A DNA stretch of 63,048 nucleotides, the filler included, from Octopus bimaculoides (taxonomy: Eukaryota), in the NCBI RefSeq assembly GCF_001194135.2. It is 6 parts of 5 records of this genome, joined end to end, with 100 filler letters (N's around TTAATTAATTAA, not from the genome) between each part and the next. Parts side by side here need not be neighbours in the genome. Positions count along the whole stretch, not along the records: positions 58,907 to 63,048 come from NC_069003.1; 5 more parts are not named here. One strand, written 5' to 3'. Position 1 is the first letter of the stretch, and each line of letters starts with the position of its first letter. The notes beneath the pieces were generated by a model. It saw nothing but the letters and a program-made list of their open reading frames with translations. It did not search any database and was not told the origin of the DNA. Below are positions 58,907 to 63,048 of this stretch, piece by piece. The translations under genes were made by a program, and so were the position numbers.

Positions 58907-61900
58907 TCGTTCGGTCGTTCGTTAGTTCTTTCGTTCGTTCGTTCTTTCGCTAGTTCGTTCCTTCGTATGTACGTTCGTTTGTACGTTCTTACGAACAAAC
59001 GAAGGTACGTTTGTACATACGTTCATACGTAAGAATGAAGGAATGAACGAACGTAAGTACGTACGAACGAACGAATGTACGTACGTACGAACGAACGTGC
59101 GTAAGTATTTACGAACAAAAAACCAAACGATCGAAGGAACGAACGAATGAACGAACGTACGTACGTAAGAACGAACGATTGTACGTACAAAAGAACGAAC
59201 GTTCATACGTAAAGATGAAAGAATGAACGAAGGTAAGTACTCCGAACGAACGAATGAACGTACGTACATACAAACGTACGTACATACAAACGTACGTACA
59301 TACAAACGTGCGTACGTATGTACGAACGTACGACCAAACGATCGAAGGAATGAATGAAAGAACGAACGATCGTACGTACATACGAACGAACGAGCGAATG
59401 AACGAAGAAACGAGATGAATAAACGAGCGAACGTACGAACGAACGAACGTGCGTATGTACGAACGTACGAACGAAGGAAATAACGATTGAACGTACATAC
59501 AAACGTACGTACGAACGTACGAACGAATGAAAGAACGTACGTACGTACGTAATTACGTATGTACGAACGACCGAAAGACTGAACGTACGTACGCAAGTAC
59601 GTCCGAACGAAAGAACGACCGAACGAACGAGCGAAAGAATGAACGTGTGTACGTACGTAAGTACGAACGATCGATCGTAATTACGTACGTAGGTACGAAC
59701 GAATGAACGTACGTATGTGCGGACGAACGAAAGAACGAACGATCGAAGAAACGAACGAAAGAAGGAACGTACGTACGTACGAACGATCGTACGTACGTGC
59801 GTACATACGACCGAACGGAGGCACGTACTTACGTATGTACGTACTAACGTACAAACGAACGTACATACGAAGGAACGAACTAACGAAAGAACGAACGAAA
59901 NNNNNNNNNNNNNNNNNNNNNNNNNNNNNNNNNNNNNNNNNNNNNNNNNNNNCCGAAAGACTGAACGTACGTACGCAAGTACGTCCGAACGAAAGAACGA
60001 CCGAACGAACGAGCGAAAGAATGAACGTGTGTACGTACGTAAGTACGAACGATCGATCGTAATTACGTACGTAGGTACGAACGAATGAACGTACGTATGT
60101 GCGGACGAACGAAAGAACGAACGATCGAAGAAACGAACGAAAGAAGGAACGTACGTACGTACGAACGATCGTATGTACGTGCGTACATACGAACGAACGA
60201 ACGTACGGACGTACGTACGTACTTACGTATGTACGTACGAACGTACAAACGAACGTACATACGAAGGAACGAACTAACGAAAGAACGAACGAAAGAATGT
60301 ACGTGCGTAAGTACCAAGAAACAAACGTACGTACGTACGATCGAGCGAACTAAGGAACGTGCGTACATACGTCCGTACGTACGAACGAACGAACGAACGT
60401 ACGCCCGAAAGCAGGTACGTAACAACGAATAAAAGAACGAACGAGCGTACGTACCTAAGTAGTACGTACATTAGAATGAACAAACGAACGAACGAACAAA
60501 CGAACGAACGTACGCACTTGTGATCGAAAGACAGATCGAACGAACAAACGAACGAACGTACGTAAGTTCGAACGAACGAACGAACGACCGAACGATCGAA
60601 GGAACGAACGAAACAACGAACGTACATACGAACGAACCAACGAACGAACGTACGTACGAACGAACGTACTTACGTACGTTCGTACTTACGTACGTACGTA
60701 AGAACATACAAATGAACGTACATACGAAGGAACGAACTAGCGAAAGAACGAACGAACGAAAGAACTAAAGAACGAACGGAAGAAAGAACGTACGTGTGTA
60801 CGTACGAAGAAACGAACGAACGGACAAACGAAGGTACGTTTGTACGTACGTTCATACGTAAGAATGAATGAATGAACGAACGTGCGTACGTATTTAAGAA
60901 CGAACGACCAAACGATCGAAGGAACGAACGAAAGAACGAACGTACGATCGTACGTAAGCATGAACGATCGTACGTACATACAAACGAACGAACGTAGCGA
61001 AAGAACGAACGTATGTATGTACGTAAGTACGAACGAACGATCGTAATTACGTACGTAGGTACGAACGAACGAACGTACGTACGTAGGTACGAACGAACGA
61101 ACGTACGTACGTGCGGACGAACGAACGATCGAACGATCGAAGGAACCAACGAAAGAACGAACATACGTACGCACGAACGATCGTACGTACGTACATACGA
61201 AAGAACGGACGGACGGACGTACGGACGTACATACGTATGTACGTACGAACGTACAAACGAACGTACATACGAAAGAACGAGCTAACGAAAGAAAGAACGA
61301 AGGAAAGAACTAACGAAAGACAGAACGAAAGAACGTATCAAGAAACAAACGTACGTACGATCGAGAGAACTGAGGAATGTGCGTACATACATCCGTACGT
61401 ACGAACGAACGAACGAACGTACGTCCGAACGTTGGTACGTACGAACGAACAAAGGAACGAACGAACGTACGCACTTGTGAACGAAAGAAAGACCGAACAA
61501 ACAAACAAACGAACGTACATACGTCGGAACGAACGAAGGAACGACCGAAACAACGAATGTACGTACGTACATACGAACGAACGCACTAACGAACGAACGT
61601 ACGTACGTAGGTACTACTTACATTATAATGAACAAACGAACAAACGAACGAACGTACGCACTTGTGAACGAAAGAAAGATCGAACGAACAAGCAAACGAA
61701 CGTACGTACGTCCGAACAAACCTAAGTACAACGAAGACCGAACGAAAGACCGTACGTGTGTACGTACGAAGAAACGAACGAATGAACAAACAACACAACG
61801 AACAAACGAAGGTACGTTTGTACGTACGTTCATACATAAGAATGAAGGAATGAACGAACGTAAGTACCGACGAACGTACGTACGCACGTTCGTTCGACGT

Positions 61901-63048
61901 ATGTACGAACGAACAATCAAACGATCGATGGAACGAACGTACCTACGTACGTAAGAACGAACGATCGTACGTACATACGAACGAACGAACGAATGAACGA
62001 AGAAACTAAATGAATAAACGAGCGAATGTACGAACGAACGAACGAACGTATGAAGGAACTAACGATTGAACGTACATACGCATGTATGTACTAACGAACG
62101 AACGAACGAAAGAACGAACGTACGTACGAACGATCGTACGTACGTGCGTCCATGGGAACTAACGAACTACGGACGTACTTACGAATTTACGTACGTACGT
62201 ACGAACGTACAAACGAACGTACATACGAAAGAACGAAGGAAGGAAAGAACTAACGAACGACCGAACGAAAGAACGTACGTGCGTACGTACAAAGAAGCAA
62301 ACGTTCCTTCAATCGTTCGGTCGTTCGTTCGTTCGTTTATTCATTTGGTTTCTTCGTTCATTCGTTCGTATGTACGTACGATCNNNNNNNNNNNNNNNNN
62401 NNNNNNNNNNNNNNNNNNNNNNNNNNNNNNNNNNNNNNNNNNNNNNNNNNNNNNNNNNNNNNNNNNNNNNNNNNNNNNNNNNNNNNNNNNNNNNNNNNNN
62501 NNNNNNNNNNNNNNNNNNNNNNNNNNNNNNNNNNNNNNNNNNNNNNNNNNNNNNNNNNNNNNNNNNNNNNNNNNNNNNNNNNNNNNNNNNNNNNNNNNNN
62601 NNNNNNNNNNNNNNNNNNNNNNNNNNNNNNNNNNNNNNNNNNNNNNNNNNNNNNNNNNNNNNNNNNNNNNNNNNNNNNNNNNNNNNNNNNACGTACCAAC
62701 ATTCGGATGAACGTTCGTTCGTACATACGGACGTATGTACGCACGTTCCTTAGTTCGCTCGATCGTACGTACGTACGTTTGTTTCTAGCTACTTACGTAC
62801 ACACGTACGTTCTTTCCTTCGTTCGTTCTTTCGTTAGTTCGTTATTTCGTATGTACGTTCGTACGTACATACGTCCATACGTACGTACGTACGTTCGTTC
62901 TTTCGCTCGTTACTTCGATAGTTCGTTCGTCCGCACGCAAGTACGTTCGTTCGTTCGTACCTACGTACGTAATTAGGATCGTTCGTCCGAACTAACGTAC
63001 GTACATACGTTCGTTCTTTCGCTCGTTACTTCGATAGTTCGTTCGTCC
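58907..63048. repeat. CpG-dense complex tetranucleotide satellite (ACGA/ACGT mosaic) with higher-order modules and internal inversions
   Basis: In-phase 4-nt words ACGA, ACGT, ACAT, ATGA, AAGA, ACAA, TCGA; recurrent 30-100 bp modules; orientation switches near 58990 and 62300. Confidence 0.95.

What the first reader, a model, noticed from the sequence alone, without database searches (positions are those of the whole stretch)
58907..63048. Satellite written in a 4-nt 'alphabet' with shuffled higher-order modules
Seen: more than 4 kb stays largely in one 4-nt phase using a small word set (ACGA, ACGT, ACAT, ATGA, AAGA, AAGG, ACAA, TCGA), yet specific word strings recur as modules. AAACGAAGGTACGTTTGTAC occurs at about 58997, 60826 and 61804; GTAATTACGTACGTAGGTACGAACGAA at 59677, 60059 and 61043; CGCACTTGTGA at 60513, 61470 and 61657. 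Spacing is near 1 kb in places, but module order varies. It is neither a simple microsatellite nor a fixed-monomer satellite, and CpG density approaches one per 4-8 bp in an AT-rich genome. Inference: a microsatellite-derived higher-order satellite, possibly with a chromatin role (methylation sink, heterochromatin or centromere-associated array). I do not know of a description of it.
Basis: partly seen in the sequence, partly recalled or inferred. Interest (0 to 1): 0.7.

Follow-up and report, generated by a model that had tools for sequence, protein, structure and literature searches.

The report
Degenerate ACGA/ACGT satellite with 1-kb repeat
This is a real but ordinary kind of non-coding tandem repeat: a decayed 4-letter repeat (ACGA/ACGT) that was re-amplified as a roughly 1-kb unit with a fixed internal order. 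Part of the apparent "shuffling" comes from an assembly-gap duplication and from strand flips.

Summary
The raw observation holds. All three modules sit at the stated coordinates, and the 4-nt word set and CpG density (0.157 per bp, o/e about 3.2) are as described. Word strings recur far more often than in word-shuffled controls.

"Shuffled module order" is not supported. The order is M1 M2 |gap| M2 M3 M1 M2 M3 M3 M1, a fixed M1-M2-M3 cycle with a period of about 957-1020 bp.

The M2-M2 pair straddles gap 1. The last 330 bp before that gap repeat the first 342 bp after it, starting and ending exactly at the gap edges. This is probably an unclosed contig overlap or haplotype duplicate.

The absolute 4-nt phase also shifts about 12 times.

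Unit copies differ mostly by 4-nt-multiple indels, which points to slippage. CpG transitions are only 1.8x more frequent than non-CpG transitions. I found no RNA family, tRNA, Pfam domain or real coding frame. No copy turned up in the prokaryotic, viral or metagenome collections, or in the literature.

Best reading: a satellite derived from a simple sequence and organised into a higher-order repeat, the same kind as human HSat2/3. Copy number, genomic location and any chromatin role cannot be tested here. Interest is low to moderate.

The parts
58907..58993 (-). Left block in the opposite orientation (TCGT/CGTT words). It is the reverse complement of the stretch that precedes module 1 in other units. 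The piece is cut here, so its extent is unknown.
   Evidence: 96% identical to rc(60697-60775) with a 55-nt exact match to 60714-60768; 98% identical to rc(59846-59899). Orientation marks switch at 58992/58994.
58994..59900 (+). Direct-orientation array on contig 1: unit 1, carrying module 1 then module 2. The M1-to-M2 distance is 680 bp, against 217 bp in the next unit, because of local duplications of about 211 bp.
   Evidence: Anchors 58995->60824, 59122->60907, 59358->61953, 59672->61038. Internal duplication 59079-59167 / 59290-59378.
59901..59952 (.). Assembly gap 1 (52 N). It is probably spurious, because the flanks overlap.
   Evidence: 59571-59900 aligns to 59953-60294. The first 221 nt are exact, then 5 mismatches and a 12-nt indel cluster within about 25 nt, and the last 77 nt contain one further mismatch. 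The alignment starts at the first base after the gap and ends at the last base before it. CpG phase jumps by 2 across the 52 N.
59953..60294 (+). Right-hand copy of the gap-flanking duplicate.
   Evidence: 94.7% identity over 342 columns.
60054..61037 (+). One full higher-order unit, measured from module 2 to module 2 (984 bp). It contains M2 (60059), M3 (60513) and M1 (60826).
   Evidence: Colinear exact anchors to the next unit: 60054->61038 (984), 60224->61232 (1008), 60372->61392 (1020), 60499->61456 (957), 60789->61751 (962), 60824->61802 (978).
61038..62298 (+). The next higher-order unit plus a partial one. It contains M2 (61043), M3 (61470), an M3 duplicate (61657, 187 bp later) and M1 (61804), and it ends at the right strand switch.
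   Evidence: 61239->62195, offset 956; 61456->61643, offset 187; 86.8% identity to the previous unit, gaps excluded.
58997..59016 (+). Module 1 (AAACGAAGGTACGTTTGTAC), also at 60826 and 61804. It stands out because it carries a short patch of opposite-orientation words (ACGTTTGTAC..ACGTTCAT).
   Evidence: Reverse-type marks at 59021, 60850 and 61828 are conserved in all three copies.
61043..61069 (+). Module 2 (GTAATTACGTACGTAGGTACGAACGAA), also at 59677 and 60059 (the gap duplicate). Its reverse complement lies at 62950-62975.
61470..61480 (+). Module 3 (CGCACTTGTGA), also at 60513 and 61657.
62299..62383 (-). Start of the right inverted block. It forms an inverted repeat with 61963-62041, with about 270 bp between the arms.
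   Evidence: 62313-62369 matches rc(61985-62041) at 91%; 62361-62383 matches rc(61963-61985) exactly. As single-stranded DNA, 61940-62383 folds into a long hairpin: -129.4 kcal/mol, z = -13.3.
62384..62690 (.). Assembly gap 2 (307 N). Both flanks are in inverted orientation and colinear with the reverse complement of the unit. There is no flank overlap. Colinearity predicts about 530-555 bp missing.
   Evidence: Left edge matches unit position 61963; right edge matches about 60412 (equivalent to 61432). My subtraction gives 531-554 bp.
62691..63048 (-). Inverted copy of the module-2 part of the unit (rc of about 60000-60412). It contains a 116-nt tandem duplication and is cut by the edge of the piece.
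   Evidence: 61-nt exact match of 62726-62786 to rc(60317-60377); 90.7% identity in gapped alignment. TRF period 116, 1.9 copies, 62830-63048. 62879-62932 and 62995-63048 are 98% identical.

Best explanation
The piece is a non-coding tandem array built from the tetranucleotide ACGW (ACGA = (GAAC)n, ACGT = (GTAC)n).

Shown:
- The 4-nt lattice persists over all 3.78 kb of read sequence.
- About half the words are exact, and most of the rest are one substitution away.
- A block of about 250 words (957-1020 bp) with a fixed internal order (module 2, module 3, module 1) is itself tandemly repeated about three times.
- Unit copies are more similar to each other than to other in-phase stretches of the array.
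- Unit copies differ by substitutions and by indels that are mostly multiples of 4 nt.
- The array changes strand twice.

Inferred history: a compound (GAAC)n/(GTAC)n microsatellite grew by replication slippage, which preserves the 4-nt phase. It decayed by point mutation into a cryptically simple patchwork. A kb-sized stretch of that patchwork was then amplified by unequal exchange or segmental duplication, giving a higher-order repeat. Smaller local duplications (16, 28, 116, 187 and about 211 bp) and fold-back or inversion events followed, possibly helped by the self-complementary GTAC/ACGT runs.

The CpG richness is inherited from the founder motif, which has one CpG per word. It is not maintained by selection.

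The most likely 'function' is none that depends on the sequence: a neutrally evolving satellite or long degenerate simple repeat.

For: - 4-nt lattice: 18 phase runs for 595 CpGs; TRF period 4, 574.5 copies, 69% matches, 1% indels; position profile A 86%, C 76%, G 83%, A/T 58/38%.
- Modules exceed word-shuffle controls.
- Fixed order and a period of about 1 kb.
- Unit copies are 87-92% identical, against 60-72% for any two in-phase stretches.
- Indels: 9 of 10 in confident HSPs are multiples of 4; 25 of 41 in global alignments.
- CpG transitions are 0.057 per site against 0.032 at non-CpG sites, and transversions are equal.
- Gap-1 duplicate.
- Strand switches.
- Non-coding: stop-free pseudo-ORFs lie on both strands and in several frames, with no Pfam hit, no close protein relative, no Rfam family and no tRNA.
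- The kind is documented: HSat2/3 are diverged arrangements of an ancestral 5-mer with kb-scale units and inversion breakpoints (PMC4022460).
Against: - Only 4.1 kb is visible, cut at both ends and broken by two gaps. Array length, genomic copy number and flanking context are unknown.
- This appears to be a draft assembly: it has estimated gaps and one overlapping gap flank. The inversion junctions and the longer first unit could therefore be assembly errors.
- Identity across whole units is only modestly above background in ungapped or low-gap comparisons (73-75% over 840-860 columns). The higher-order repeat therefore rests on conserved islands plus colinearity.
- Absence of function is an inference from lack of evidence, not a test.
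Confidence: 0.72

Rival explanations
1. The larger-scale architecture (the 1-kb repeat, the strand switches, the unit-length differences) is partly or wholly an artefact. On this reading a draft short-read assembler and scaffolder stitched together reads from several similar degenerate microsatellite loci or from two haplotypes.
For: There are two gaps in 4.1 kb. The flanks of gap 1 overlap by 330-342 bp at 94.7%, with the match beginning and ending exactly at the gap edges. CpG phase is discontinuous across both gaps. Neither inversion junction is a clean reciprocal inversion or a perfect palindrome.
Against: Contig 59953-62383 contains no N, and it alone holds more than two colinear unit copies that differ by 8-13%. 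Collapse produces one consensus copy, not several diverged colinear ones. The right inverted block stays colinear with the unit across gap 2.
Confidence: 0.15
2. The array is a functional chromatin element: a centromere-associated or heterochromatin-nucleating satellite, or a CpG-dense target ('sink') for DNA methylation.
For: CpG density is very high (0.157 per bp, o/e 3.1-3.3). The organisation is satellite-like, with a higher-order repeat and inversions. For context only: in Octopus bimaculoides satellites carry relatively more 5mC than transposons (PMC9476566), but the source organism of this piece is not known to me.
Against: CpG sites are not conserved between unit copies. They take more substitutions than other sites, but the transition excess is only 1.8-fold. 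That fits neither selection for CpGs nor heavy germline methylation. There is no evidence on copy number or chromosomal position. The modules were not found in any searchable collection.
Confidence: 0.1
3. The array is an overgrown microsatellite tail or internal repeat of a transposable element, for example the 3' tail of a non-LTR retrotransposon.
For: In a metagenome contig, a degenerate (GAAC)n/(GGAC)n/(GACA)n array of about 290 bp lies inside the 3' part of a called ORF on a contig that also carries a separate reverse-transcriptase (RVT_1) ORF about 4 kb away on the opposite strand (L121).
Against: No transposon coding sequence, terminal repeat or any non-repeat sequence is visible in the 4.1 kb. 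At more than 3.8 kb with a 1-kb higher-order unit, the array is far longer than the 50-700-bp arrays found elsewhere.
Confidence: 0.03

Closest known systems
Human satellites 2 and 3 (HSat2/3)
   Same: Both derive from a short ancestral simple sequence that diverged into a complex arrangement of variant words. Both have kb-scale higher-order units (a 1.77-kb HSat2 unit is cited). Reads matching both strands indicate inversion breakpoints. RepeatMasker labels both as simple repeats (PMC4022460).
   Different: The founder motif differs: the 4-mer ACGW here, against the 5-mer CATTC. There is no sequence homology. HSat2/3 are multi-megabase and pericentromeric, whereas the array size and location here are unknown. 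One CpG per word makes this array much more CpG-dense.
Compound or imperfect tetranucleotide microsatellites: (AACG)n = (GAAC)n and (ACGT)n = (GTAC)n
   Same: The same words, and the same phase-preserving slippage indels. Short examples with the same alphabet occur in many eukaryote-like metagenome contigs (L020, L043, L112, L117).
   Different: Those examples are 50-700 bp, purer, and show no kb-scale repeat. This array is over 3.8 kb, only 51% exact words, and has a repeating word order of about 1 kb.
Cryptically simple sequence, and the classical model in which satellites evolve by cycles of divergence and re-amplification of short repeats (from my own knowledge: Tautz, Trick and Dover 1986; Southern 1970/1975)
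   Same: A scrambled mix of a few short motifs produced by slippage, followed by amplification of a longer diverged block. This yields nested periodicities: 4 nt, a weak period of about 20-24 nt, about 460-540 bp, and about 1 kb.
   Different: These are general models, not a family. They predict the architecture but say nothing specific about this sequence.

Membership tests
Microsatellite (simple sequence repeat) | Head-to-tail copies of a 1-6-nt unit | tested here: met
   TRF period 4, 574.5 copies over 59986-62279. CpG spacing is 4/8/12 nt in 556 of 594 intervals.
Microsatellite (simple sequence repeat) | High purity of a single unit and no longer-range order | tested here: not met
   69% matches in TRF. 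Only 51% of words are exact ACGA/ACGT, and two founder words are interleaved. A significant period of about 1 kb is present.
Satellite DNA with higher-order repeat | A multi-monomer unit repeats in tandem, and copies of the unit are more alike than neighbouring stretches within a unit | tested here: met
   Colinear anchors at offsets 957-1020. Unit copies are 87-92% identical, against 60-72% for arbitrary in-phase stretches. The lag histogram exceeds the Markov control.
Satellite DNA with higher-order repeat | Long arrays and high genomic copy number | not testable with these tools
   The piece is cut at both ends and no eukaryotic genome or read set is available. The modules are absent from the metagenome, prokaryote and viral collections.
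Simple-sequence-derived complex satellite (HSat2/3-like kind) | Diverged arrangement of a short ancestral motif, with kb-scale units and strand inversions | tested here: met
   The inversions hold only if the assembly is correct.
Simple-sequence-derived complex satellite (HSat2/3-like kind) | Sequence homology to HSat2/3 (CATTC-derived) | tested here: not met
   The founder motif is ACGW, not CATTC. This is an analogue, not a member of that family.
Centromeric satellite | Occupancy by centromeric histone, or cytological location at the centromere | not testable with these tools
   No chromatin, FISH or chromosome-scale data.
CpG island | CpG o/e above 0.6 together with G+C above 50%, in unique promoter-associated sequence | tested here: not met
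   o/e is 3.1-3.3, but G+C is 44-46% and the sequence is entirely tandem repeat. Promoter association is not testable.
Protein-coding repeat | One conserved reading frame, 3-nt-compatible indels, and homologues or domains | tested here: not met
   Stop-free frames lie on both strands. Indels are multiples of 4, not 3. There is no Pfam hit. The only protein hits are 3 low-complexity ones at 48-51% identity.

The most novel reading that the evidence does not exclude
The array is one copy of an abundant, lineage-specific, CpG-dense (ACGW)n satellite family. Its fixed 1-kb word order, self-complementary GTAC/ACGT runs and strand switches would mark a specific chromatin domain, for example a methylated or pericentromeric satellite in a genome whose other repeats are unmethylated.
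Probability: 0.1. Interest if true: 0.5.

Novelty: new member of a known kind. Interest (0 to 1): 0.22.

Why it matters
- It gives a worked example of how a long 'simple repeat' annotation can hide a higher-order satellite, and how a gap-flanking duplicate can mimic module shuffling.
- If the family proves abundant, its module 22-mers would be handy markers for copy number, FISH and assembly quality control. Its very high CpG density would make it a sensitive read-out of repeat methylation in that genome.
- As it stands, it changes nothing conceptually. Simple-sequence-derived higher-order satellites are well known.

Tried and rejected
- **Coding repeat protein:** rejected.
- **Structured RNA or tRNA-derived element:** no Rfam or tRNA hit.
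- **Exact-protein look-up of two pseudo-ORFs to recover the source contig and its flanks:** nothing on record.
- **Module strings in other collections:** 0 hits in metagenome, prokaryotic-genome and viral collections.
- **Generic ACGW x6 scan of metagenomes:** 120 or more loci, all short ordinary microsatellites with no module homology.
- **Protein search with a 204-aa pseudo-ORF:** three weak low-complexity hits. The contigs I read for two of them carry (GAAC)n-type arrays of about 290-500 bp.
- **Second-order Markov word control:** discarded as overfitted, because it re-copies real strings.
- **Global autocorrelation:** uninformative beyond about 150 nt because of phase shifts.
- **Ungapped family finder:** swamped by the 60-72% background identity.
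- **Simple reciprocal inversion of the 3.3-kb direct block:** the breakpoint positions in unit coordinates do not match by about 100-250 bp (my own arithmetic). This is left unresolved.
- **Literature:** searches on cephalopod satellites, AACG/ACGT tetranucleotide arrays and literal sequence strings found no description. One paper id I guessed was not held.
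Full report
**What is in the piece.**
The 4142 positions consist of three read stretches: 58907-59900, 59953-62383 and 62691-63048. They are separated by 52 N and 307 N. All of the read sequence is tandem repeat. TRF reports period-4 arrays: 59126-59899 with 193.5 copies, and 59986-62279 with 574.5 copies at 69% matches and 1% indels. 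It also reports weak period-20/24 arrays. G+C is 44-46%. CpG density is 0.157 per bp, with observed/expected of 3.1-3.3.

**Check of the observation.**
- The 595 CpGs fall into only 18 phase runs. Successive CpGs are 4, 8 or 12 nt apart in 556 of 594 intervals.
- I tokenised the sequence with CG at word positions 2-3. The commonest words are ACGA (25%), ACGT (22%), TCGT (5.6%, the reverse complement of ACGA, found in the inverted blocks), then AAGA, ACAA, ACAT, ATGA, ATGT, AGGA and TCGA.
- In the direct-orientation core, 51% of 719 words are exact ACGA/ACGT, 39% are one substitution away, and 62 distinct words occur. The position profile is A 86%, C 76%, G 83%, then A 58% / T 38%. A-type and T-type words come in short runs, with means of 4.4 and 2.9 words.
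- The word set, CpG density and 4-nt lattice are therefore confirmed.
- "One phase" is only partly right. The period never lapses, but the absolute phase shifts, giving 13 phase blocks of at most about 620 bp.

**Are the modules more than chance?**
I removed one copy of the gap-flanking duplicate and used only the direct-orientation core.
- Positions belonging to repeated 5-word strings number 130. An iid word shuffle gives 20.6+-7.5, and a first-order Markov model of words gives 52.6+-14.6.
- For 6-word strings the figures are 82 observed, against 3.4 and 12.4.
- For strings containing at least two non-ACGW words, the 5-word figures are 80 observed, against 1.3 and 19.9.
- A second-order Markov control was discarded because it re-copies real strings.

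- *Gap 1.* The last 330 bp before the gap (59571-59900) align with the first 342 bp after it (59953-60294). The first 221 nt are identical. Five mismatches and one 12-nt indel then fall within about 25 nt. The last 77 nt contain one further mismatch. The alignment starts at the first base after the N run and ends at the last base before it. The CpG phase jumps by 2 across 52 N.
- A real tandem duplication whose borders coincide with both gap edges is very unlikely. This is the usual signature of an unclosed contig overlap, or of two haplotypes placed in tandem around a gap.
The 382-bp spacing is not evidence of shuffling.
- *Gap 2.* The flanks do not overlap. Both are in inverted orientation and are colinear with the reverse complement of the unit. 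The left edge corresponds to unit position 61963, and the right edge to about 60412 (equivalent to 61432). By my own subtraction, about 530-555 bp would be missing if the inverted copy is full length, against 307 N written.

**Higher-order structure.**
- Sorted by position, the modules read M1 M2 |gap 1| M2 M3 M1 M2 M3 M3 M1. This is a strict M1-M2-M3 cycle with one local duplication of M3 (187 bp; 61456-61492 matches 61643-61679 exactly).
- Exact anchors of 22 nt or more between successive units are colinear, at offsets 984, 1008, 1020, 957, 962, 978 and 956.
- Inside the gap-free stretch 59953-62290, 189 of 649 exact 16-mer pairs have lags of 920-1039, and 30 more have lags of 1960-1999. The 960-1039 bins hold 131 pairs, against 23.8+-15.7 (maximum 83 of 200) in Markov-1 word controls.
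- In gapped alignments, unit copies are 86.8-92.1% identical with gaps excluded (multiple alignment A1). Any two in-phase stretches of 100-300 nt are already 60-72% identical. With fewer gaps allowed, whole units are 73-75% identical over 840-860 columns. The higher-order repeat thus consists of well-conserved islands in conserved order on a noisy background.
- There is also a half-unit sub-repeat: offsets 455-541 at 82-85% over 190-250 nt.
- Unit 1 has 680 bp between M1 and M2, against 217 bp in the next unit. This is explained in part by a duplication of about 211 bp (59079-59167 / 59290-59378).
- "Module order varies" is therefore not supported. "Spacing near 1 kb" is supported.

**Strand switches.**
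- 58907-58993 is the reverse complement of the stretch that precedes M1 in other units: 96% identity to 60697-60775, with 55 nt exact.
- 62299-63048 is inverted and colinear with rc(60000-60412), including a 61-nt exact match and the reverse complement of module 2 at 62950-62975.
- Orientation marks confirm this. Inside the direct block only 12 of the reverse-type marks (TTCG/GTTC) occur, and three of them are the conserved patch inside module 1.
- At the right junction, the arms 61963-62041 and 62313-62383 lie about 270 bp apart. As single-stranded DNA they would form a long hairpin: -129.4 kcal/mol, z = -13.3.
- Neither junction is a perfect palindrome or a clean reciprocal inversion (my reading). 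Because this appears to be a draft assembly with estimated gaps, both junctions need read-level confirmation.

**How it evolves.**
- In confident HSPs between unit copies, 9 of 10 indels are multiples of 4 nt: six of 4 nt, and one each of 8, 12 and 16 nt. In more permissive global alignments the figure is 25 of 41. This fits replication slippage by whole words, which also explains why the phase is kept for hundreds of bases.
- Word position 4 is almost only A or T, with G and C at about 2% each. This suggests that two founder words each spread by slippage, rather than arising from random substitution.
- Substitutions between copies run at 0.057 transitions per CpG site against 0.032 per non-CpG site (1.8-fold). 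Transversions run at 0.061 against 0.057.
- CpGs are therefore not protected. Their decay is also far milder than the roughly tenfold excess I would expect, from my own general knowledge, for heavily germline-methylated DNA. The CpG richness is most simply a legacy of the motif, which has one CpG per word.

**What it is not.**
- There is no Rfam family and no tRNA.
- The 34 ORFs of 50 aa or more lie on both strands and in several frames. They read as ERTN/VRTY-type translations of the words.
- The ORFs tested have no Pfam domain. The one 204-aa pseudo-ORF I searched gave only three low-complexity protein hits at 48-51% identity. The contigs I read for two of those hits carry (GAAC)n-type arrays of about 290-500 bp.
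- Indels in multiples of 4 are incompatible with a conserved reading frame.

**Relatives elsewhere.**
- Module strings of 22 and 28 nt have no exact match in the metagenome, prokaryotic-genome or viral collections.
- Two exact pseudo-ORF look-ups found no source contig.
Their arrays are 50-700 bp of ordinary (GAAC)n, (GTAC)n or (GAAT)n. BLAST similarity to the piece is confined to low-complexity stretches.
- No eukaryotic genome collection is available here. Copy number, chromosomal location and taxonomic spread therefore remain untested.

**Comparison with what is known.**
- The architecture matches simple-sequence-derived satellites. [quoted passage not shown] They include a published 1.77-kb unit and reads matching both strands at inversion breakpoints. 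[quoted passage not shown]
- The present array is an analogue with a different founder motif. It is not a homologue.
- I found no paper describing this sequence or an (ACGW)n satellite.
- Cephalopod genome papers lump such DNA under simple repeats: 14.7% of the Octopus minor genome (PMC6279123) and 5.83% of the Sepia officinalis genome (PMC13218726).
- In O. bimaculoides, satellites are reported to carry relatively more 5mC than transposons (PMC9476566). This would make the methylation question worth asking if the source is an octopus.

**Verdict.**
This is a real, non-coding, degenerate ACGA/ACGT array with a higher-order unit of about 1 kb in fixed order, local duplications, and (if the assembly is right) two strand switches. 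It is a new example of a known kind. A chromatin role is neither supported nor excluded. Interest is low to moderate.

Noticed in passing
window 59571-59900 and 59953-60294: The two flanks of the 52-N gap are near-identical: 221 nt exact, then 5 mismatches and a 12-nt indel clustered within about 25 nt, then 77 nt with one further mismatch. This looks like an unclosed contig overlap or a haplotype duplicate rather than genome sequence.
   Followed up: yes
window 58997-59040, 60826-60870, 61804-61850: Module 1 contains a conserved patch of about 25-30 nt of opposite-orientation words (GTACGTTTGTAC..ACGTTCATAC), bounded by palindromic GTAC. It looks like a micro-inversion that was then copied along with the 1-kb unit.
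   Followed up: partly
window 62830-63048: A 116-nt tandem duplication inside the inverted block (TRF 1.9 copies; 62879-62932 and 62995-63048 are 98% identical). It runs into the edge of the piece.
   Followed up: partly
window 59257-59309 and 61048-61112: Small local tandem duplications with periods that are multiples of 4: a 16-nt unit ACGTACGTACATACAA (about 3 copies) and a 28-nt unit (37-nt exact match at offset 28).
   Followed up: no
window 62384-62690: Colinearity of the inverted unit across gap 2 predicts about 530-555 bp missing, against 307 N written. Either the gap size is underestimated or this inverted copy carries a deletion.
   Followed up: partly
L121 10265-10560 (ENA metagenome contig ctg323432, 42,964 bp): A compound (GAAC)n/(GGAC)n/(GACA)n microsatellite of about 290 bp lies inside the 3' part of a called ORF. 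A separate reverse-transcriptase (RVT_1) ORF sits about 4 kb away on the opposite strand of the same contig. This hints that tails of retrotransposon-like elements may be a source of GAAC-type arrays.
   Followed up: no
L043 2380-3080 (JGI metagenome contig Ga0126342_10035157): A 700-bp compound tetranucleotide microsatellite that switches between (GAAT)n, (GAAC)n, (GAAG)n and (GCAT)n. It is the longest array with a similar 4-nt alphabet among the metagenome hits, but it has no kb-scale repeat and no GTAC words.
   Followed up: no
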